Of a stretch of 64,000 nucleotides of DNA, positions 1,515 to 64,000 are shown one piece after another (the first letter of the stretch is position 1; each line of letters opens with the position of its first letter). The stretch is from assembly GCF_001194135.2 (NCBI RefSeq), contig NC_068987.1, forward strand, positions 60,448,354-60,512,353, written 5' to 3'. The notes below the pieces were generated by a model. It did not search any database. It was not told the origin of the DNA and was given only the letters and a program-made list of their open reading frames with translations. The DNA comes from Octopus bimaculoides. Lineage: Eukaryota. The translations under genes were made by a program, and so were the position numbers.

Positions 1515-2109
1515 ACTGACACATGAAAATAAAGAATAATAAATCAAAATATGAAAAATATCACTAAAAAATATTTATTAATTTCAGTGAGAGGAAAAAA
1601 AAATTAGAACATAGCAGAATCAATTTTTCCTTAAGAGTATAATATCCTGATTAAATATTTAATTATCTATGAAAATATATTCTGAATAAAATATGAAGAA
1701 AAAAAGATTTTATTTTCATTTTCTTTTACTTTATTTTATTTATTTTTTTGCACATATTCAATTCATAGCAATATATATATATATGTGTGTATGTATGTAT
1801 GTATGTATGTATGTATGTATGTATGTATGTATGTATGTATGCATGCATGCATGTATGTATGTATGTATGTATGCATGTATGTATGTATGTATGTACAAAT
1901 GACAAACAAAAAATCATGGTTTAAGGTAATCAAATATTTATGAGAGTTTTCTTTTTCTATCCATATATATATTTCATTGGAACTGTGTAGAAGTGTGAGT
2001 TTCATCTTGGGATTTAATTCATTAAATCACAAATAATTGCTGCTTAATCATCACGATCAATAACAACAGCCAAAACAATTTCATTATTATTCTCATCCCT
2101 TTTAACATT

Positions 2110-2403
2110 ATCACCATCATCATTATCATCATCATCATCATCATTATCATCATCATCATCATCATCATTACCATCACTACCACCACCACCACCATCACCA
2201 CCATCATGGTTCTCATCATCATTATCATCATCATCACCATTACCATCATCCTCATCCTTATCTCCATCCTCATCATCAGTCTCATTGTTGTCATCGTCAT
2301 CAGTGTCACCATCATCATCAGTGTCGTCATCATCATCATCATCATCATCTCTGCTGTTGTCACCACTACCACCATCACTTCCACCACCTCTGCTATCTCT
2401 ACT

Positions 2404-2456
<53 letters not shown>

Positions 2457-2505
2457 CATCATCCTCATCATCATCATCTACTTCCTCTTCTTCCTCTTCT
2501 TCCTC
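2110..2505. repeat. Compound (ATC)n/(ACC)n/(TTC)n trinucleotide microsatellite
   Basis: Read directly. It is the source of the poly-D/M/S/I ORFs. Confidence 0.95.
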
Positions 2506-2669
2506 CATACAGTTGCTATCCATATGTTATCACAATTGTCAACTATTTTTGTGTAACCATATGATCAAACTTTTGAAGATAACATAAATATCATATCACA
2601 CATGCACATCTACACGCTATTTATAGATAAATAGATAGATAGGCAGTGTTAAGGCCAGTCCTTCTGGTG

Positions 2670-3591: not shown

Positions 3592-3920
3592 NNNNNNNNN
3601 NNNNNNNNNNNNNNNNNNNNNNNNNNNNNNNNNNNNNNNNNNNNNNNNNNNNNNNNNNNNNNNNNNNNNNNNNNNNNNNNNNNNNNNNNNNNNNNNNNNN
3701 NNNNNNNNNNNNNNNNNNNNNNNNNNNNNNNNNNNNNNNNNNNNNNNNNNNNNNNNNNNNNNNNNNNNNNNNNNNNNNNNNNNNNNNNNNNNNNNNNNNN
3801 NNNNNNNNNNNNNNNNNNNNNNNNNNNNNNNNNNNNNNNNNNNNNNNNNNNNNNNNNNNNNNNNNNNNNNNNNNNNNNNNNNNNNNNNNNNNNNNNNNNN
3901 NNNNNNNNNNNNNNNNNNNN
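3592..3920. other. Assembly gap (N run) after (TA)n. Other gaps: 7683-8511, 23259-23359, 32719-33118, 34328-35186, 35738-36048, 40423-40845, 45524-46291, 47085-47415, 58266-58712
   Basis: N runs read directly. Most are flanked by (TA)n, (CA)n or (CT)n. Confidence 1.
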
Positions 3921-7325: not shown

Positions 7326-8701
7326 CATACATACATACATACACACATATATATACATGCATATACATATATATATACATATATATATACATATACACAC
7401 TATATATATATATATATATATATTTATTTATTATATAATATATATATATATAAATATAAATATATGTATAAATATATATATATATAAATGAAAAATATAT
7501 GTATATATGTGTGTGTATGTATGAATGCATGTATGTATATGGTGGAGTTGTACGTGTGTGCATTTATGTTTGTGTGTGAATGTTATATAGTGGGTATTTT
7601 CTATTCAATTTTGGATATTTCTGTTATCACCAACAGTTTATGCATATATACATATATATTTATATATATATATATATATATANNNNNNNNNNNNNNNNNN
7701 NNNNNNNNNNNNNNNNNNNNNNNNNNNNNNNNNNNNNNNNNNNNNNNNNNNNNNNNNNNNNNNNNNNNNNNNNNNNNNNNNNNNNNNNNNNNNNNNNNNN
7801 NNNNNNNNNNNNNNNNNNNNNNNNNNNNNNNNNNNNNNNNNNNNNNNNNNNNNNNNNNNNNNNNNNNNNNNNNNNNNNNNNNNNNNNNNNNNNNNNNNNN
7901 NNNNNNNNNNNNNNNNNNNNNNNNNNNNNNNNNNNNNNNNNNNNNNNNNNNNNNNNNNNNNNNNNNNNNNNNNNNNNNNNNNNNNNNNNNNNNNNNNNNN
8001 NNNNNNNNNNNNNNNNNNNNNNNNNNNNNNNNNNNNNNNNNNNNNNNNNNNNNNNNNNNNNNNNNNNNNNNNNNNNNNNNNNNNNNNNNNNNNNNNNNNN
8101 NNNNNNNNNNNNNNNNNNNNNNNNNNNNNNNNNNNNNNNNNNNNNNNNNNNNNNNNNNNNNNNNNNNNNNNNNNNNNNNNNNNNNNNNNNNNNNNNNNNN
8201 NNNNNNNNNNNNNNNNNNNNNNNNNNNNNNNNNNNNNNNNNNNNNNNNNNNNNNNNNNNNNNNNNNNNNNNNNNNNNNNNNNNNNNNNNNNNNNNNNNNN
8301 NNNNNNNNNNNNNNNNNNNNNNNNNNNNNNNNNNNNNNNNNNNNNNNNNNNNNNNNNNNNNNNNNNNNNNNNNNNNNNNNNNNNNNNNNNNNNNNNNNNN
8401 NNNNNNNNNNNNNNNNNNNNNNNNNNNNNNNNNNNNNNNNNNNNNNNNNNNNNNNNNNNNNNNNNNNNNNNNNNNNNNNNNNNNNNNNNNNNNNNNNNNN
8501 NNNNNNNNNNNGATATTCTTTTGTTTGTAAAATTACTTCTCATCTGATGATTACAGTTTTTTTCTGATGGAGTAATGTTCTATTTCTTCTATTAAAAAAT
8601 GCATAAGAAACAGTTGTAATGAACTGACAATTATCCATTGTCCATATGGACAATTATCCATATATATATATATATATATATGATATATATATATATATAT
8701 G

Positions 8702-15820: not shown

Positions 15821-15998
15821 TCAGTAGTTTTATTTTTATAGCGTGCTTTCACTTCACTACCGAGCGCAGCTCTGTGTGCCTTGGGTATGTGCTGTGGTTT
15901 GCTGTGATGCTCTTATGGTTACTGTATTGAAAGTGTTTTGCGTAGGATTTGTGCAGTGCTCAGTAGTGCAATTTTCTGTATGTTATATATATTTGTCC
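15821..15998 (-). mobile_element. R4/Dong-like LINE 3' end with (TAA)n tail
   Basis: Minus frame NIYNIQKIALLSTAQILRKTLSIQ*, then a 3' UTR ending tactgaataataa into (TTA)n at 15743-15820. Same 3' end on + at 44482. Confidence 0.75.
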
Positions 15999-16009
15999 TT
16001 ATTATTATT

Positions 16010-16101
<92 letters not shown>

Positions 16102-16104
16102 TAT

Positions 16105-16592
16105 TTTGTGAGGTTGTTGATTGAAGATATGTGTGCAGTTCCAAGTAATGCCAACTTTTGCAATACACGTAGATTGTAGAGTATTTCTAAAGTTCTCAGA
16201 TGTTTTTTTCAGGTTTTCAGGTTGGGAGGTATTGAACCCAATGCTCCAATGACAATAGGGATAACTTTTATATTTGACTCTCATAGCTGCCACATCTTGG
16301 TGATCTCAATTCTCAGGTCTCCATATTTATCAACCCTTCCTCTTTCTTTCATGATGATATGTTGATCTCCGGGCACTGTCATGTCAATTTTTAGGCCCTC
16401 CTGATTGTCCCTCCTAAAGGTTACTATATCTGGCCTTCAGTGCTCTAATACCTTGTCTGTCTGGAAGTCAAAATCCAAGAGGGTTTTGCCTTCCCCTTTT
16501 CGTCCATTACCTTTTCCAGTGCATGTTGATACCAAGCACCTATAACCTCATAGCCATACTTATGGCATAGTAGTCAATGAAGGTTTTGAGCT
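16105..16592 (-). mobile_element. R4/Dong-like LINE restriction-like endonuclease domain fragment (frameshifted)
   Basis: Minus-strand pieces LH*LLCHKYGYEVIGAWYQHALEKVMDEKGKAK..DFDFQTDKVLEH*RPDIV..IDMTVPGDQH..DKYGDL..IVIGALG..LQKLALLGTAH fit the PD-(D/E)xK RLE of R4-clade elements. Confidence 0.8.
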
Positions 16593-21577: not shown

Positions 21578-21817
21578 GAGACATTGAGTATGTTTCAGCA
21601 AGCTTATGGCAACAAGGCAACAAGTCATATGCAATGTTTTGAGTGGCATGGGTGCTTCAAAAGTGGAAGAACATCTTTGAAAGATGATGAGTGATCTGGA
21701 AGTTCTGCCGTGAGTGTCATCCCCAGAAATGTGAAGAAGATTCATCAGCTTATGCTTGAAGATCGTCAGAAGACAATCACTGACATTGCTGATGTTGTTG
21801 GTCTGTCGTATGAGTCC
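21578..21817 (+). pseudogene. Mariner transposase N-terminal HTH fragment (irritans-like)
   Basis: ETLSMFQQAYGNKATSHMQCFEWHGCFKSGRTSLKDDE*SGSSAVS..VKKIHQLMLEDRQKTITDIADVVGLSYES matches the mariner FEWHxxFKxGRxSxxDDxRSGRP motif. Confidence 0.8.
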
Positions 21818-22174
21818 AATATTGTGTGGCAGTTGTAAATGAGCATCACTGTCAAACAAGCCGTGACTTTCATTTTCAATCTTTTGTGTGAAAACATCTT
21901 TAGCCATAGGGAAAAGTCACCTTGCTTGGAAATAGGTGAGAGGTGGCAGCAGGAAGAGGATTTGGCTATAAAATATCACCTCAATAAACTCTATCCAACC
22001 TGTTAAAGCATGGGAAAGTAGATGCCTAAATGATGATAATAGGTCGATGATGATGATGATAATGATGATGGTGGTGATGGTGGTAGTTGTGGTGACAATG
22101 ATGATGGTGATTGTTATTGTTTTTTTAAAGACTGAATGTTTGATTTTTGTTTTTGCCTCATCCGTCGCACACAG

Positions 22175-22904: not shown

Positions 22905-23386
22905 AGAAAAGCCACAAAAAAACATTAGAGTAAAACATACAATATTTGTAGAAGTGTAGCTATAAAATGTCACTTCATTTCTTCTGCAGTAGCAGTAGCA
23001 AGAGCAGCAACAGTAATAACTGCAGTGGTAGCAGTAGTAGCAGCAAGGAAAACAGCAGCAATAATAAACCGCAACCATCAATAGAACTGCATCTACTGCA
23101 GCAGCAGTAACAACAATAGTCGCAATAGTGTTGAGATAAACAGAGAACGCTACTATTAGTGTTGTTATACTTTTTAAAGAAATCAACCGTCAACAGCATT
23201 GGTAGTAGTAGTAATAGTAATAGCGATAGTGGTGGTGGTGGTAGTGAGGGTTGTAGTGNNNNNNNNNNNNNNNNNNNNNNNNNNNNNNNNNNNNNNNNNN
23301 NNNNNNNNNNNNNNNNNNNNNNNNNNNNNNNNNNNNNNNNNNNNNNNNNNNNNNNNNNNGTGGTGGTGGTGGTGGTGGTGGTGGTG

Positions 23387-40210: not shown

Positions 40211-41149
40211 GTACAAGAAATACACTTCCCAGTAAATCAGAGTTTATGATTATATTATATGTTACATGAGCACATCAGATTTTCAAGTAGAAATTTTATT
40301 TCAATACTGCTTTGCTTATGAAACACCTTGTTTTATTTCTATCAGCTATTTTCTGATTCCTGTTTCTATTTTTTGCCATTTAGTTTTGTATGTGATATCA
40401 TCTACATATATACATACACATANNNNNNNNNNNNNNNNNNNNNNNNNNNNNNNNNNNNNNNNNNNNNNNNNNNNNNNNNNNNNNNNNNNNNNNNNNNNNN
40501 NNNNNNNNNNNNNNNNNNNNNNNNNNNNNNNNNNNNNNNNNNNNNNNNNNNNNNNNNNNNNNNNNNNNNNNNNNNNNNNNNNNNNNNNNNNNNNNNNNNN
40601 NNNNNNNNNNNNNNNNNNNNNNNNNNNNNNNNNNNNNNNNNNNNNNNNNNNNNNNNNNNNNNNNNNNNNNNNNNNNNNNNNNNNNNNNNNNNNNNNNNNN
40701 NNNNNNNNNNNNNNNNNNNNNNNNNNNNNNNNNNNNNNNNNNNNNNNNNNNNNNNNNNNNNNNNNNNNNNNNNNNNNNNNNNNNNNNNNNNNNNNNNNNN
40801 NNNNNNNNNNNNNNNNNNNNNNNNNNNNNNNNNNNNNNNNNNNNNATATATAAATATATGCATGTGGTATTTCTCTGTTTGTGTGTATGTTAAATGATTA
40901 CGTGTGTGCATGTGTGTAAGTATCTGTAGTTAACAGACACTCAGCAATAATGCAGGTGCATCATTGAATTACAAATGTTCCATAAGAGAACATATTAGTT
41001 TAGTTATGATGCATAACAAACTGTCATACGTTGTTTCACTATACAAGTATAATAATAAATGTGTTCACTCATGTCTAAACATTTGCTCTGACACATGTAA
41101 CCTTGTATGTCTAATGAGCAATATATGAATTTAGATGTAATAGTTTCTT

Positions 41150-44645: not shown

Positions 44646-46519
44646 GATGATGATGAGGAGGAGGAGGAGGAAGATGATCAATAACAACTCAAACATTATC
44701 ATTACTATCGCCCTCATCAGTAACTTCAGAGCACTTTAAGAGAATTTGAACTCTTAATGCTCAAGACCGTCATCCATTTTCCTTAAGTAATGATTAACGG
44801 AAAAAAAAAAAACAAAGGCGTCAAATTTTCACTTTAATATCATGGCTTGCCTCATGACAAATCAATTCTATAAAAAAATATTTCCAATAATTGGAATATT
44901 TGATTCTTTGACCCAGTCTAGACACTTTACCATACCATAAACTTAGTAATTAAGTATCTCTTACAATTGACTATGTTGTCATTTTACCAAGGTTAAATTG
45001 CTTTGCTTTCTAATTTTCAGCTTGTCTGATCTAATCATATAATTAAAGATAATTTGCAATTAATTCTCACTGCATTAATTATTGTAATATGTTCCAGATG
45101 TAAATTTTAACACTCAACTAATTTAACTGTGAATGAATTAAAAAAGGATTTTGGATTATATACTGAAGACTACATGACTATGTGTGCACATGTATGCCTA
45201 TGTATATAGATATATATACATATATGAGTATGTGTGTGTATGTATGCATGCGTTTATGTATGCATGTGTGTATGTATGTATATATGTATGTTTGTATGTA
45301 TGCGTGCATGTATGTATACACATACAGAGAAAGAGTGAGAGAGAGAGAGAAATGTAACAAATATTTACATTTCATCCATATATATATATATATATATAGT
45401 ATTCATAGCCACTTTAACATGGCTGTCCATTCAAGTGGACTGTACTGTGATTTTTTAACCCCAAGTGGACATCTCCTCTAGCTGGTCAATGATGCACAGC
45501 TGCATCGGATATATATATATATANNNNNNNNNNNNNNNNNNNNNNNNNNNNNNNNNNNNNNNNNNNNNNNNNNNNNNNNNNNNNNNNNNNNNNNNNNNNN
45601 NNNNNNNNNNNNNNNNNNNNNNNNNNNNNNNNNNNNNNNNNNNNNNNNNNNNNNNNNNNNNNNNNNNNNNNNNNNNNNNNNNNNNNNNNNNNNNNNNNNN
45701 NNNNNNNNNNNNNNNNNNNNNNNNNNNNNNNNNNNNNNNNNNNNNNNNNNNNNNNNNNNNNNNNNNNNNNNNNNNNNNNNNNNNNNNNNNNNNNNNNNNN
45801 NNNNNNNNNNNNNNNNNNNNNNNNNNNNNNNNNNNNNNNNNNNNNNNNNNNNNNNNNNNNNNNNNNNNNNNNNNNNNNNNNNNNNNNNNNNNNNNNNNNN
45901 NNNNNNNNNNNNNNNNNNNNNNNNNNNNNNNNNNNNNNNNNNNNNNNNNNNNNNNNNNNNNNNNNNNNNNNNNNNNNNNNNNNNNNNNNNNNNNNNNNNN
46001 NNNNNNNNNNNNNNNNNNNNNNNNNNNNNNNNNNNNNNNNNNNNNNNNNNNNNNNNNNNNNNNNNNNNNNNNNNNNNNNNNNNNNNNNNNNNNNNNNNNN
46101 NNNNNNNNNNNNNNNNNNNNNNNNNNNNNNNNNNNNNNNNNNNNNNNNNNNNNNNNNNNNNNNNNNNNNNNNNNNNNNNNNNNNNNNNNNNNNNNNNNNN
46201 NNNNNNNNNNNNNNNNNNNNNNNNNNNNNNNNNNNNNNNNNNNNNNNNNNNNNNNNNNNNNNNNNNNNNNNNNNNNNNNNNNNNNNNNNNNATATATATA
46301 TATGCATATGATTTGATATGATACAAAGGCTATCAACTTGTTAATTGAATATGACAGAGTACATGCACATTTGCACCAAACGTTTTAAAAACCAACAATA
46401 TATAGAGCTGAAAATTTACAGTTTAAAATTACCAGAAGACGATTAGGGATGGTCAACACGTTGTGTGACTAAACGTGACACTTTAGTCCAGCAAGAGATA
46501 TACAAATTTTTTCTCACAG

Positions 46520-46968: not shown

Positions 46969-47914
46969 AGTCTAATGATTGCCTATATGGCTAAGTGTTT
47001 TATAGGTGCAACACCAATGGTCACTCTTTGACCAGCCATAACAACCAACTTCCTAAAAATATATATTATGCGTACATACATATANNNNNNNNNNNNNNNN
47101 NNNNNNNNNNNNNNNNNNNNNNNNNNNNNNNNNNNNNNNNNNNNNNNNNNNNNNNNNNNNNNNNNNNNNNNNNNNNNNNNNNNNNNNNNNNNNNNNNNNN
47201 NNNNNNNNNNNNNNNNNNNNNNNNNNNNNNNNNNNNNNNNNNNNNNNNNNNNNNNNNNNNNNNNNNNNNNNNNNNNNNNNNNNNNNNNNNNNNNNNNNNN
47301 NNNNNNNNNNNNNNNNNNNNNNNNNNNNNNNNNNNNNNNNNNNNNNNNNNNNNNNNNNNNNNNNNNNNNNNNNNNNNNNNNNNNNNNNNNNNNNNNNNNN
47401 NNNNNNNNNNNNNNNATATATATATATATATATATATATGTGAGAAAAAAGATGACGAAAGAATAAACGATTATCTTATGAACTTCATTAGCTTACTGCT
47501 GTTTCTGCTATAAGGTGCAGTGGACTCCTAGTTGAGTGCCTGAATAACTCCTTATAGCTGCATCAGAGTCTCAAACAAGAAGGGCAATTTATTTATATAG
47601 CATAGGAATAGGTGCAAGTGTGGCTGTGAGGTAAGAAACTTGCTTCTCAACCACATGGATCCAGGTTTAGTCCCACTGCATGGAACCTTGGGTAAGTGTC
47701 TTCTGTGCAAGCTTCAGGCTATCCAAACTCTTGTTAGTGGATTTGGTAGACAGAAACTGAAAAAAAGCTGTCATTTGTATATGTGGTTGTGTGTGTGTGT
47801 GTGAGACTGTGTCTGTAAGCCATCAAAGAATCCGTAAGTTAGGAAAAATGCACTTGTATATCTGTCAGTAGAGTGGGTGTATTAATCAGAATATACAGTA
47901 TTATATATATCCAT

Positions 47915-47966
47915 TACAGCTAATCTTACCAGTCAGTTTCACACTATGTAACCATGCACTCATCAG
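47915..47966 (-). ncRNA. Inverted, loop-II-deleted hammerhead ribozyme copy (decayed)
   Basis: Minus strand CTGATGA-gtgcatggttacatagtgt-GAAA-ctgactg-GTA-agattagctgtaatgg. The 5' strand of stem I is replaced by the inversion junction. Confidence 0.55.
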
Positions 47967-47968
47967 AT

Positions 47969-48074
47969 TCCATAATGGCTACCTCTGATGAGTGCAGGGT
48001 TACATAATCGGACTGTCACCTAACACTGTTGAACCCCTTGTATGAAACCAATTGGTAAAATCAGCTGTAATGGA
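47969..48074 (+). ncRNA. Type I hammerhead ribozyme motif (Penelope-like element/retrozyme type)
   Basis: Stem I 5' tccataatggctacct, CTGATGA at 47985-91, stem II gtgcagggtt/aaccccttgtat, GAAA at 48044-47, palindromic stem III ACCAATTGGT at 48047-56, cleavage triplet GTA ending 48057, stem I 3' aaatcagctgtaatgga. Confidence 0.75.
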
Positions 48075-48592
48075 TATATAATACTGTACACTTTGATTAG
48101 TATATGTGCATGTGAGTGTATGTGTGTGTGTGTGTGTGTGCATGTCTTTGTGTCTGTGTTTGTCCCTCCACCATCACTTGACAACCGATGTTGGTGTGTT
48201 TACATCCCTGTAACTTAGCAGTTCAGCAAAAGGAACTGATAGAATAAGTACCAGGCTTTACAAATAAATAATAAGTACCGGAGTTGATTTATTCCACTAA
48301 ATTTTTTCAAGGCAGTACCCCAGCATGGTGGCAGTTTAATAAGTGAAACAAGTAAAAGATAAAGAATATAAAACGTGAAAGAAAAGGAATTATATCAGAC
48401 ATATATTTCAGATTAAGTCTGGAATAGTTTCGTTTTTTATTACTGTTTTTATTTTCCAGTACACTTCACTCATTTATTCAATTTACATATCACTTGAAAA
48501 AGTTTAAAAGATACATTGATTTCAATGTTTTATTTATGTATTAATTACTATATGTTTCCTAATTTCATTAATATCTTCTTGAAATGATAAAG

Positions 48593-48665
48593 AATCCTCA
48601 TGTATTTTACATATTATAATTTCATTTTAATTTATATATTTCTTTTTCTTTCTTTGCAGGTGAGT
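48593..48665 (+). promoter_or_regulatory. Candidate recursive splice site (3'ss directly followed by 5'ss) at 48659|48660
   Basis: 65-nt AG-free zone, tract tttctttttctttcttt, then gcAG|GTGAGT. Confidence 0.6.
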
Positions 48666-48829
48666 ATTTATACCTGTGTGTATATCTAAATATATATATA
48701 TATCATTAAAGAACTTGGTAAGATAAGGATTTTTCAATTCGTTTTTTTTTTTTTTATATTTTTATATTAATATGTATGCATACTGTTATTTACAGTCTAT
48801 ATTCATTTAGCTAATATCACAACTTCCCT

Positions 48830-49315
48830 AAGGAGGTGAGCTGCTAGAATCGTTAACACACCAAACAAAATGCTTAGTGACATTTCATCCATCTTTACAT
48901 CCTGAGTTCAAATTTCACTGCCACTTGAAAAGCACCTATGCTGGTGCTGCATAAATATGCCCGTGCTGGAGTTGTGTAAACACACCCATGCTGGTGGCAC
49001 ATAAAAAGCACCTAGCACACTCATTTAAGTAATTGACATTAGGAAGAACATCCAACCATAGAAACCATGCCACAACAGACAACTGGAGTCTGGACAGCTC
49101 TCTGCTAGCTGGCTCCATGTTAAACTGTCCAACTCATGTCTGTATGAAAAGCAGACATTAAACAATGATGATGATGGTGATGATGATGTTGACTTTGCCT
49201 TTCATCCTTTCAGGGTTGATAAAATAAGTACCAGTTCAGCGCTGGGGCCGATGTCATCAACTTATCTCCTCCCCCAAAGTTTCTGGCCTTGTGCCAAAAT
49301 TTGAAACCAATATGT
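48830..49315 (+). mobile_element. Family A SINE interrupted by a family D element (~48930-49185)
   Basis: Family A head stops at 'ttcaaatttcactg'. The family A body resumes 'gttgactttgcctttcatcc' at ~49188. Confidence 0.75.
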
Positions 49316-49437
49316 TTATTTATCCTACACAATAATGTGAATACATAGACCCAACAGCTTGATCTCTCACTCATTAGAAGTACCTATGAATGGCTGGTCA
49401 GATCTGTTCTTTTGAGGATGAGTGGAGAAATAATTGT

Positions 49438-58215: not shown

Positions 58216-58712
58216 TGATGATAACATGTATTATGTGTGTATGTATTATATATATATATATATATNNNNNNNNNNNNNNNNNNNNNNNNNNNNNNNNNNN
58301 NNNNNNNNNNNNNNNNNNNNNNNNNNNNNNNNNNNNNNNNNNNNNNNNNNNNNNNNNNNNNNNNNNNNNNNNNNNNNNNNNNNNNNNNNNNNNNNNNNNN
58401 NNNNNNNNNNNNNNNNNNNNNNNNNNNNNNNNNNNNNNNNNNNNNNNNNNNNNNNNNNNNNNNNNNNNNNNNNNNNNNNNNNNNNNNNNNNNNNNNNNNN
58501 NNNNNNNNNNNNNNNNNNNNNNNNNNNNNNNNNNNNNNNNNNNNNNNNNNNNNNNNNNNNNNNNNNNNNNNNNNNNNNNNNNNNNNNNNNNNNNNNNNNN
58601 NNNNNNNNNNNNNNNNNNNNNNNNNNNNNNNNNNNNNNNNNNNNNNNNNNNNNNNNNNNNNNNNNNNNNNNNNNNNNNNNNNNNNNNNNNNNNNNNNNNN
58701 NNNNNNNNNNNN

Positions 58713-60026: not shown

Positions 60027-60913
60027 CAAGGGGGTACCCAAAAGTAACCAGAAACGTTTTCTGTAGTTCAGGCTTCTGCTACTAGAAGTCACCTGATGCG
60101 ACCCTCAGGCATCAGTGTGCTGACTGGCATTGTCCAGTGAGGTCATACTGCCACGCGCTGCGTCTTTGTTTTGCATTGCTTCTCCCATGTTTGTTGATTT
60201 TTGCTATGGCTGAAACAAAGGAACAGCATTGCTTCCATGAAATTCTGTTTTCTACGGGGGAAAACAGCAGCTGAAACATTTCTCGTGATTCAAACAGCTT
60301 ACAGGGCCACTGCCATGAGCAAAACATAAGTTTACAAGTGGTTTTCATGCTTTAGGAATGGTCACTTATCGCTTGAGGGTCAACCTCATTCAGGGCAACT
60401 GTCCACCTCTCAAAAGAATGACATCATGAAAATTCCTAAACTGATCTTGGAAGACTGTCACCAAACAATTGATGAACTTGTTGATATGACTGGTGTATCC
60501 TGGAGCTCATGTCAATGAATTTTGAGTGAGGAATTGCAAATGAAAAGAGTTGCAGCAAAACTTGTGCCTTGCTTGCTCATTGAAAATCAAAAGCAGTCAC
60601 GACCGAATGCGTGCTGTGAAGTGAAAGAATAGTTGGAAGTTGATCCTGACCTTTTTTCAAAGGTCATCACTGGTGATGAAAACTGCTGCTACAGAATCTG
60701 CAGATGTGAAAGAGGGGAAGAAAAAACAATGGAGGTGTTAAAAGGCATCACTTTGCAAGAGTTCTAAGACTGCTTCCAACAGTGGAAAACACATCTGAAC
60801 TGATGCATTGCTTCAAATGGAGAATACATTGAAGGCGATAAGAGTGTAAACATGTAAAATTAGGTGAAAGAAATAATATTGCAAAATTCTGGTTTCTTTT
60901 GGGTACCCCCTTG
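60027..60913 (+). mobile_element. Internally deleted mariner (irritans-like), both 27-bp TIRs and TA TSDs intact; decayed transposase 60206-60857
   Basis: TA-CAAGGGGGTACCCAAAAGTAACCAGAA ... TTCTGGTTTCTTTTGGGTACCCCCTTG-TA (1 mismatch). MAETKEQ..VYKWFSCFRNG..MKRVAAKLVP..FSKVITGDE is joined to ..FQQWKTHLN*CIASNGEYIEGD. Confidence 0.93.
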
Positions 60914-62445: not shown

Positions 62446-63646
62446 ATATATATAACATTGTTTCATCCTCATCCTTTTTAACATCCACTTTTCTATATTT
62501 GCAAGGGTTAGATGGAAATCCTGTTGTCAATCCTTACCTGTTTCCATGCAAGGTAATATTTCCCCATGACCAGAAATGAATGATATTGCATGTATGAAAG
62601 TGTTACAGTAATACTAGACACAGTCATACATATACACACACTCACACACCCGCACACACACACACACACACAGGTACACACACAAGATAAGCATCTTTCA
62701 GCTTCCATACAGTAAGTCTATTCACAAGGATTTAGTCAACCCAAGGTTACAGTAAAATACATTTGCCCAGTTGCCACACAGTGGGACTGAACCGAAAACC
62801 TTGTGATTGTAATGCAAACTTCTTAACCACACAGCAACACCTAACTATGTATAAATATATATATGTATATATACATACATATATATATATATATATATAA
62901 TTTACGACAACTTGATTCAGTTGCATGTGATTTAAAGTTTTGCAGGCCTCTGGCAGAAGCCTATCTCTTTCAGGCTATAGATTACTGGCTCATCCAGTAA
63001 TCTATAAGCCAGAAAGAAACAGGCTTCTGTTAGAGGCCTGCAAAGCTTTAAGTTACTTGGAACTGAATCAAATTGTTTAAAACAATACTTGTAACTCCTA
63101 CTAAATGTGTTGACTGTCCTTTTCTTTTGTTTGTCTACTCATTCGTGTGTGTATAGGTGCATGGCTTAGTGATTTGAGCATTGGGCTTGTGATTGTAAGA
63201 TTATGGTTTCAGTTCCTGAACTGGGTATTGCATTGTGTTCTTGAGCAAAAACACTGCATTTAATGCTGCTCAGTCCACTCAGCTGGCAAAAGTGAGTAAT
63301 CCTGTGATGGACTGGTGTCTCATCCAGGTGGGTAATATATATGCCATGGAAACTGAGAAACCAGCCTTCATGAGTTGGTATGACTCAATAAGGAAACATA
63401 GTTCAGTGGTTAGAGTGTCAGGCTCACAATCATGAGATAGTGAGTTCAATTCCCAAATCAGGGTGTAGGGTGTGTTCTTGAGCAAAGACATTTTATTTCA
63501 TGTTGCATCACTGGTGCCAAGTTGTATCAGCCTTTGCTTTTCCTTTGGATAGCATCGGTGGCATGAAGAGGGGAGGCTGGTATGCATAAGTGACTGTTGG
63601 TCTTCCACAAACAAATTCACCTGGACTTGGTCATTCACGATTGACC

Positions 63647-64000
63647 TTACCCGCTAGAGGGGAAGCAGATAAGGAAAGATTTGCCAATGTTCTGCGCCGT
63701 GAGGACCAAAGACACGAGGTATTTCGTGTTGCAAGACAGTGTAGGAGAGAGAATAGTGATGTCGTAGGAGACAAATGTGTTCGCATGGATGATGGTATGC
63801 TTGCACTAAATGAGGCTGCAAAGAAAAAGGTCTGGAGATGCCACTACGATAGATTGCTTAATAAAGAGAATGAATGGGAGAAAGAGAGCCTGCTATATGT
63901 CGACCCAACAGAGGGACCAGCTATCCGAGTTGATAGTACCAGGGTAGATAAAGCAATTAAGAGTATGAAGACAGGGAAAGCCCCCAGCCCATCAGGAATC
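63647..64000 (+). mobile_element. 5'-truncated RTE-clade LINE ORF2, open to the window edge
   Basis: ARGEADKERFANVLRREDQRHEVFRVARQ..DVVGDKCVR..WRCHYDRLLNKENEW..DKAIKSMKTGKAPSPSGI. The KAPGPxG-like motif precedes the RT domain. No stop in 63590-64000. Confidence 0.85.

What the first reader, a model, noticed from the sequence alone, without database searches (positions are those of the whole stretch)
48593..48723. Textbook recursive (ratchet) splice site with a downstream stop-containing RS-exon
Seen: a 65-nt AG-exclusion zone and an uninterrupted T/C tract end in gcAG|GTGAGT, so a consensus acceptor regenerates a consensus donor with zero exon length. A second donor TTG|GTAAGA at 48718 defines a 58-nt exon with stops in all three frames. 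Known: AG|GT ratchet points subdivide very long introns in Drosophila, and vertebrate recursive sites use such poison RS-exons. Inference: recursive splicing occurs in a long cephalopod intron, which I am not aware has been characterised in molluscs. It also indicates + strand transcription of the host gene.
Basis: partly seen in the sequence, partly recalled or inferred. Interest (0 to 1): 0.7.

Follow-up and report, generated by a model that had tools for sequence, protein, structure and literature searches.

The report
Unverified recursive-splice-site look-alike in octopus DNA
The sequence really does contain a near-perfect "acceptor fused to donor" motif of the kind used for stepwise removal of long introns. 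Nothing available here shows that it lies in a gene or is used, and a genome this size should hold a few hundred such motifs by chance.

Summary
A 17-nt pyrimidine run ends in GCAG|GTGAGT at 48659/48660. It is preceded by 65 nt without AG. A second donor, TTG|GTAAGA, lies 58 nt downstream, and the interval has stops in all three frames.

The acceptor/donor fusion is a real outlier in this window. Only 5 acceptor-like sites this strong occur on both strands, and 0.003-0.005 would be followed by GTRAGT by chance (0.04-0.06 with a slightly weaker tract). The AG-free zone, second donor and stops add little: chance gives about 0.15, 0.13 and 0.24.

Scaled to a ~2.7-Gb genome, chance alone gives roughly 10^2-10^3 equal sites. 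The motif sits in T-rich low-complexity DNA, between a small tandem duplication and a (TG)n(TA)n microsatellite. It lies in a ~450-bp single-copy spacer between interspersed repeats.

About 7,300 aa of unique ORFs from the 64 kb match no known protein, and no Rfam family or tRNA is present. So neither a host gene nor + strand transcription can be shown.

Conservation and RNA intermediates, the defining features of recursive sites, could not be tested.

My estimates: chance pseudo-site 0.55, genuine recursive site 0.25, ordinary or cryptic exon edge 0.12.

The parts
48593..48657 (+). 65-nt AG-free zone upstream of the acceptor. It contains a branch-like TTAAT (A at 48630, 29 nt before the AG) and a 19-nt tandem duplication at 48604-48647.
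   Evidence: previous AG at 48591-92; TRF, period 19, 2.3 copies; local composition 58% T, 3% G; p~0.15 for such a gap.
48639..48655 (+). Uninterrupted 17-nt pyrimidine run (T TTCTTTTTCTTTCTTT), a (CTTT)n-like tract.
   Evidence: Y run 17; 18 of 20 pyrimidines upstream of NCAG. One of only 5 acceptor-like sites this strong in the window.
48656..48665 (+). GCAG|GTGAGT: a consensus 3' splice site fused to a consensus 5' splice site, with the junction between 48659 and 48660. CAG|GTGAGT is also simply a perfect ordinary donor.
   Evidence: It is the only AGGTRAGT on the + strand of the window, and it lies in sequence that is single-copy within the window.
48660..48717 (+). Putative 58-nt cryptic (RS) exon. 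It has stops in all three frames and is largely a decayed compound microsatellite: (TG)3 followed by (TA)11 at 48681-48703.
   Evidence: translations; TRF; 40% of the 50 nt after the GTGAGT is dinucleotide repeat; stops in 3 frames in 24% of random 58-mers.
48718..48723 (+). Second donor-like site, TTG|GTAAGA.
   Evidence: Chance of a GTRAG 30-120 nt downstream is ~0.13.
47600..48374 (.). Upstream interspersed-repeat copy (5-7 other copies in the window), interrupted by microsatellite. It bounds the single-copy spacer that holds the motif.
   Evidence: self-BLAST coverage.
48829..49330 (.). Downstream block of interspersed repeats (up to ~20 copies in the window). It carries its own AG|GTGAGC at 48834, preceded by a T-run at 48742-48763.

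Best explanation
The motif is most likely a chance pseudo-splice-site composite in non-coding, T-rich, low-complexity octopus DNA.

A short (CTTT)n-like pyrimidine tract happens to end in GCAG. It abuts a GTGAGT that looks like a variant unit of a decayed (GT)n(TA)n microsatellite. GTGAGTATTTATAC differs from GTGTGTATATATAC at 2 of 14 positions.

On this reading the DNA is intergenic, or sits in an intron in either orientation. The site is not used, or is used at most as spliceosomal noise, and the second donor and the stops are incidental.

Shown here: the sequence, its rarity within the window, its low-complexity setting, and the absence of detectable genes in the window. Inferred: that it is not used.
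For: - Genome-scale expectation. Chance gives 0.003-0.005 sites of this strength per window and 0.04-0.06 at >=16/20 pyrimidines. A ~2.7-Gb genome (size from my own knowledge of octopus genomes) equals about 45,600 such windows. That gives roughly 140-230 and 1,800-2,700 chance sites.
- The null is calibrated and the window shows no excess of acceptor-donor fusions in looser classes. There is no second candidate on the + strand.
- Low-complexity origin is plausible. 8 of 31 GTGAGT hexamers in the window sit beside (TG)/(TA) microsatellites, against a 9% background, and this is one of them. TRF finds a 19-nt tandem duplication over the branch region and (TA)11.5 inside the supposed exon.
- No gene is detectable. 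Pfam finds only Mos1/mariner transposase remnants. About 7,300 aa of unique ORFs have no homologue among 5.8 billion protein clusters, which do include O. bimaculoides proteins. There is no Rfam family or tRNA.
- The accessory features are individually expected by chance: 0.15, 0.13 and 0.24.
Against: - For this single window the core motif is a genuine outlier (p~0.005). Adding the second donor (x0.13) brings the full configuration to about 0.0004-0.008 per window.
- It matches fly ratchet-point hallmarks beyond AG|GT: TT at -5/-6, a strong tract, a branch-like A at -29, and a ~50-nt cryptic exon.
- It is not part of a repeat family within the window.
- A window with no exons fits a giant intron as well as it fits intergenic DNA.
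- The chance estimate rests on 59 kb of sequence and on thresholds chosen after seeing the site.
Confidence: 0.55

Rival explanations
1. It is a genuine recursive splice site (ratchet point) in a very long + strand intron.

The 58-nt cryptic exon 48660-48717 would be defined by the acceptor at 48659 and the donor at 48718. The upstream exon is spliced to 48660, which regenerates xxx|GTGAGT. That regenerated donor out-competes TTG|GTAAGA, so the cryptic exon and the rest of the intron are removed in the next step.
For: - All motif-level features of the fly and vertebrate model are present: strong tract, TT at -5/-6, NCAG|GTRAGT, a branch-like A at -29 (fly peak -30), and a downstream donor giving a ~50-nt out-of-frame cryptic exon.
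- The fusion is expected only 0.003-0.005 times per window by chance.
- It is single-copy within the window.
- No exon in 64 kb is what a giant intron would look like.
Against: - No host gene, strand, conservation or RNA evidence could be obtained.
- Chance alone predicts 10^2-10^3 equal motifs genome-wide.
- In the other large-genome lineage studied (mammals), only nine fully suppressed intronic ratchet points are regarded as definite. The number of true sites may therefore be small compared with look-alikes.
- There is no series of sites on the + strand.
- The donor and the cryptic exon look microsatellite-derived.
Confidence: 0.25
2. It is an ordinary splice signal of an unannotated transcript.

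CAG|GTGAGT could be the donor ending a T-rich non-coding or UTR exon. Alternatively, 48660-48717 could be a conventional cassette, cryptic or decoy exon of a non-coding or poorly annotated gene, with no recursive step.
For: - CAG|GTGAGT is the exact 5' splice-site consensus on its own (sequence).
- Another strong acceptor-like site, ttttattttccag, ends at 48459, about 200 nt upstream. Together they would frame a 200-nt stop-filled exon.
- The protein searches cannot see non-coding exons.
Against: - There is no evidence of any transcript.
- The stop-filled AT-rich sequence has no coding potential.
- No Rfam family is present.
- The same chance arguments apply as for the best explanation.
Confidence: 0.12

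Closest known systems
Drosophila intronic ratchet points (zero-nucleotide recursive splice sites: Hatton 1998; Burnette 2005; Duff 2015, preprint 10.1101/006163; Pai 2018, PMC6110457; Joseph 2021, PMC8605326)
   Same: - Juxtaposed (Y)nNCAG|GTRAGT with a prominent pyrimidine tract.
- TT at -5/-6, seen in 99.5% of fly sites.
- A branch-like A near -30.
- A short (~50 nt), out-of-frame cryptic exon closed by a second donor.
   Different: - Fly sites lie in annotated introns of 11-133 kb on the sense strand.
- Their acceptor/donor motif is ultraconserved.
- They are defined by junction reads, saw-tooth coverage and lariats.
- None of this is shown here. The phylum is different, and the setting is microsatellite and repeat-rich DNA with no detectable gene.
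Vertebrate recursive sites with RS-exons (Sibley 2015; Blazquez 2018, PMC6224609)
   Same: - Exon-definition logic: acceptor plus a downstream donor.
- A stop-containing exon that would be a poison exon if included.
- A large, repeat-rich genome.
   Different: - Vertebrate sites were found from RNA data in very long introns of neuronal genes, and they are conserved.
- Only nine fully suppressed intronic sites are regarded as definite, so motif-only prediction has low yield in such genomes.
Pseudo-exons and decoy splice sites in long introns
   Same: Good-looking acceptor and donor pairs in non-coding, repeat-rich sequence that are not normally spliced into mRNA. They arise by chance from T-rich tracts and GT-containing repeats.
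   Different: The zero-length fusion of two near-consensus sites is much rarer than an ordinary pseudo-exon (0.003-0.005 per 64 kb here).

Membership tests
Recursive splice site / ratchet point | Juxtaposed consensus 3' and 5' splice sites, (Y)nNCAG|GTRAGT | tested here: met
   TTCTTTTTCTTTCTTTGCAG|GTGAGT with 18/20 pyrimidines. It is the only such site in the window.
Recursive splice site / ratchet point | TT at positions -5 and -6 (99.5% of fly ratchet points) | tested here: met
   The sequence ...cTTgcag| has T at -5 and -6. Criterion.
Recursive splice site / ratchet point | Usable branch point about 21-36 nt upstream of the AG | tested here: inconclusive
   TTAAT has its A at 48630, which is -29. 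Such motifs are ubiquitous in DNA that is 80% A+T, so this carries no weight.
Recursive splice site / ratchet point | Downstream 5' splice site defining a short cryptic RS-exon (~50 nt), usually out of frame or stop-containing | tested here: met
   TTG|GTAAGA at 48718 gives a 58-nt exon with stops in 3 frames. Chance is 0.13 for the donor and 0.24 for the stops.
Recursive splice site / ratchet point | Located in a long intron (>10 kb) on the sense strand of a transcribed gene | tested here: inconclusive
   No coding exon, Pfam domain other than transposase, Rfam family or tRNA was found in the 64 kb. Either a giant intron or intergenic DNA is possible, and the strand is unknown.
Recursive splice site / ratchet point | Acceptor/donor motif conserved above its flanks in related species | not testable with these tools
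   No cephalopod genome is reachable. Exact-protein look-ups and a metagenome DNA scan found nothing.
Recursive splice site / ratchet point | RNA intermediates: exon-to-site junction reads, saw-tooth read density, lariats from the regenerated donor | not testable with these tools
Recursive splice site / ratchet point | Enrichment of the motif over chance expectation | tested here: inconclusive
   Within the window p~0.005-0.05. Genome-wide, chance gives about 10^2-10^3 sites. A sense-versus-antisense comparison in introns was not possible.

The most novel reading that the evidence does not exclude
The site is a working recursive splice site in a giant (>64 kb) intron of an octopus gene transcribed on the + strand. 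That would be the first recursive splicing described in a mollusc or any lophotrochozoan, and it would imply that ratchet-point splicing of long introns is shared across bilaterians.
Probability: 0.25. Interest if true: 0.55.

Novelty: not a real feature. Interest (0 to 1): 0.3.

Why it matters
If the site were used, recursive splicing would extend from flies and vertebrates to cephalopods. Their large, long-intron, neuron-rich genomes are a natural place to ask why some lineages rely on ratchet points. Specialists already regard the mechanism as unified across metazoans (PMC8605326), so a single site would be an expected extension, not a surprise.

As it stands, this is one motif match without gene, RNA or conservation support. 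Its practical value is as a seed for a genome-wide test comparing sense and antisense strands. That test could be run quickly with existing octopus annotations and total RNA-seq.

Tried and rejected
- Exact-protein look-ups of window ORFs, including the 36-aa ORF that spans the site, to find the source scaffold or other assemblies: nothing on record.
- Look-up of the O. bimaculoides protein P0002 to fetch a real octopus gene locus, for splice-site calibration and a sense/antisense test: not on record. P0001 gave only a 541-nt ENA contig. This made the planned test of motif density in real octopus introns impossible.
- A 28-mer across the site searched in JGI metagenome contigs: no match.
- Markov-chain simulations (orders 1, 3 and 5; 12 Mb each): too few events to estimate the strict class, and such models under-represent long pyrimidine tracts. 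I replaced them with the empirical product acceptor-count x P(donor|AG).
- Rfam and tRNA scans, hoping for an intronic snoRNA or miRNA that would reveal a host strand: nothing.
- The sigma-70 promoter and terminator scan is irrelevant to a eukaryote and was ignored.
- Base-skew along the window shows no consistent strand asymmetry, so it was not used.
- I considered whether the ORF at 63590-64000 was an exon of the N-terminal glutamine amidohydrolase gene and rejected it. It matches only residues 1-58 of P0002, almost entirely upstream of its Nt_Gln_amidase domain (residues 52-190), and no Pfam family hits the ORF. I read it as a dispersed repeat.
- I considered whether the motif belongs to an interspersed repeat and rejected it for this window. 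The ~450-bp spacer (about 48,375-48,828) matches other parts of the window only through simple repeats.

Full report
**Observation.**
The sequence is exactly as described.
- A 17-nt uninterrupted pyrimidine run (48639-48655) is followed by GCAG, ending at 48659.
- GTGAGT starts immediately at 48660.
- The previous AG is at 48591-48592, so the AG-free zone is 65 nt.
- TTG|GTAAGA lies at 48718, giving a 58-nt interval (48660-48717) with a stop in each frame.

**Is it more than chance?**
- AGGTRAGT occurs four times in the window, once on + and three times on -. Only this copy has a pyrimidine tract.
- Only five YAG sites on both strands have >=18/20 pyrimidines upstream.
- Multiplying by the empirical probability that GTRAGT follows an AG gives 0.003-0.005 expected sites per window. 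At >=16/20 the figure is 0.04-0.06.
- For looser classes the observed counts match expectation, for example 41 against 33.7 and 9 against 9.85. The null is calibrated, and the window shows no general excess of acceptor-donor fusions.
- The accessory features carry little weight. At the local composition (49% T, 9.5% G) a 65-nt AG-free stretch has p~0.15, and 111 such gaps occur on the + strand. A GTRAG 30-120 nt downstream has p~0.13. Stops in all three frames occur in 24% of random 58-mers.
- The core fusion is therefore a genuine outlier for one window.
It predicts 1,800-2,700 with a slightly weaker tract.

**Setting.**
- The window is a draft eukaryotic assembly with ten N gaps, about 33% G+C over the non-N bases, dense microsatellites, and 34% of its length repeated within itself.
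- An octopus origin is supported indirectly. A repeat-derived ORF at 63590-64000 is 75% identical to the N-terminal 58 residues of an Octopus bimaculoides UniRef protein, almost entirely upstream of that protein's Nt_Gln_amidase domain.
- The motif lies in a ~450-bp spacer (about 48,375-48,828) that is single-copy within the window. The spacer sits between interspersed-repeat copies at 47,600-48,374 and 48,829-49,330.
- The immediate surroundings are low-complexity. A 19-nt tandem duplication covers 48604-48647, which includes the branch region and the start of the tract. (TA)11.5 lies at 48681-48703 inside the supposed exon. A T-run lies at 48742-48763.
- GTGAGT hexamers in this window are about 2.8-fold enriched next to (TG)/(TA) microsatellites: 8 of 31 against a 9% background. 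This copy is one of them. A neutral origin from a (CTTT)n-like tract abutting a decayed (GT)n(TA)n array is plausible.

**Host gene.**
- Pfam scanning of unique ORFs from 1-52 kb found only Mos1/mariner transposase pieces.
- Two composite queries totalling about 7,300 aa of unique, non-low-complexity ORFs (>=28-38 aa, both strands, whole window) found no homologue at E<=0.001. The database of 5.8 billion protein clusters does contain O. bimaculoides proteins.
- Rfam and ARAGORN found nothing.
- No second credible AG|GTRAG site exists on the + strand.
- The window is therefore either intergenic or wholly inside an intron longer than 64 kb. Neither the intron nor + strand transcription can be shown, and deducing the strand from the motif is circular.
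- Caveats: very short exons, non-coding exons, and genes missing from the database would escape these searches.

**Comparison with what is known.**
- Fly ratchet points are (Y)nNCAG|GTRAGT sites with a more prominent tract than ordinary acceptors.
- They have TT at -5/-6 in 196 of 197 cases and branch points peaking at -30.
- They lie in introns of 11-133 kb, show strong conservation, and are supported by junction, saw-tooth and lariat evidence (10.1101/006163).
- They act through a cryptic RS-exon of about 50 nt closed by a second donor. That exon is poorly conserved and usually out of frame, and the regenerated donor normally wins the competition (PMC8605326).
- The same paper counts >500 intronic sites in flies but only nine definite fully suppressed ones in mammals.
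- The candidate meets every motif-level criterion: TT at -5/-6, a branch-like TTAAT with its A at -29, and a 58-nt cryptic exon.
- The criteria that actually discriminate (sense long intron, conservation, RNA intermediates) were inconclusive or untestable here.
- No paper in the held library connects recursive splicing with octopus or molluscs beyond incidental mentions.

**Weighing.**
- The posterior depends on how many true sites of this strength an octopus genome holds, compared with 10^2-10^3 chance sites. Requiring the second donor as well reduces the chance figure to a few tens to a few hundred.
- If octopus is fly-like, with hundreds to thousands of sites, the candidate is probably real. 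If it is mammal-like, with tens of sites, it is probably not.
- The null may also underestimate neutral production of such motifs in microsatellite clusters.
- My estimates are about 0.25 for a genuine recursive site and 0.55 for a chance pseudo-site. I put about 0.12 on an ordinary or cryptic exon boundary of an unannotated transcript, since CAG|GTGAGT is also just a perfect donor. The rest is unassigned.

**Verdict.**
- It is a reasonable candidate for a quick check against existing octopus annotation, total RNA-seq and genome alignments. On present evidence it is a motif match, not a demonstrated feature.

Noticed in passing
window 31,950-32,700 (- strand); also 21,695-21,835 (+) and 60,330-60,515 (+): Degenerate Mos1/mariner-type transposase remnants. 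Pfam Transposase_1 (E=4e-18) and HTH_48 hit the ~32-kb copy. The other two look like mariner HTH pieces by eye only, and Pfam gave no hit for 60,330-60,515.
   Followed up: partly
window 63,590-64,000 (+), runs off the end of the window: An open frame of 137 aa is 75% identical to residues 1-58 of an Octopus bimaculoides protein annotated as N-terminal glutamine amidohydrolase. The match lies almost entirely upstream of that protein's amidase domain (residues 52-190). I read it as a dispersed, retrotransposon-like repeat that has been built into that gene model. The retrotransposon resemblance is from memory, and Pfam gives no hit.
   Followed up: partly
window 3592-3920, 7683-8511, 23259-23359, 32719-33118, 34328-35186, 35738-36048, 40423-40845, 45524-46291, 47085-47415, 58266-58712: Ten assembly gaps (4,798 N in all). 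In the six-frame translations most of them adjoin YIYI/CVCV-type frames, that is (TA)n or (TG)n microsatellite. This suggests the draft assembly broke at simple repeats.
   Followed up: no
whole window, e.g. 49,188-49,322 and 48,829-48,923: Short interspersed repeats (about 90-500 bp, 70-88% identical) are very abundant. 34% of the window has at least one other copy in the window and 20% has three or more. One family has about 20 copies in 64 kb. No tRNA or Rfam match was found, so their class is unknown.
   Followed up: partly
window 21,469 (- strand): A second CAG|GTGAGT fusion lies on the minus strand, preceded by a TA-rich tract and not a pyrimidine tract (11/20 pyrimidines, 39-nt AG-free zone). 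It is a much weaker look-alike.
   Followed up: no
window 2,020-2,590; 15,840-16,300; 26,395-26,745: Long trinucleotide-type simple repeats give homopolymeric 'proteins' in several frames (M/D/I/S runs; V runs). They account for several of the longest ORFs in the window and are not genes.
   Followed up: no
window 28,430-29,750: A GC-richer (0.41-0.48) single-copy island has overlapping ORFs on both strands. Short pieces resemble the C-terminal region of LINE reverse-transcriptase ORFs, a resemblance from memory. Pfam found nothing, so it is probably an old retrotransposon fragment.
   Followed up: partly
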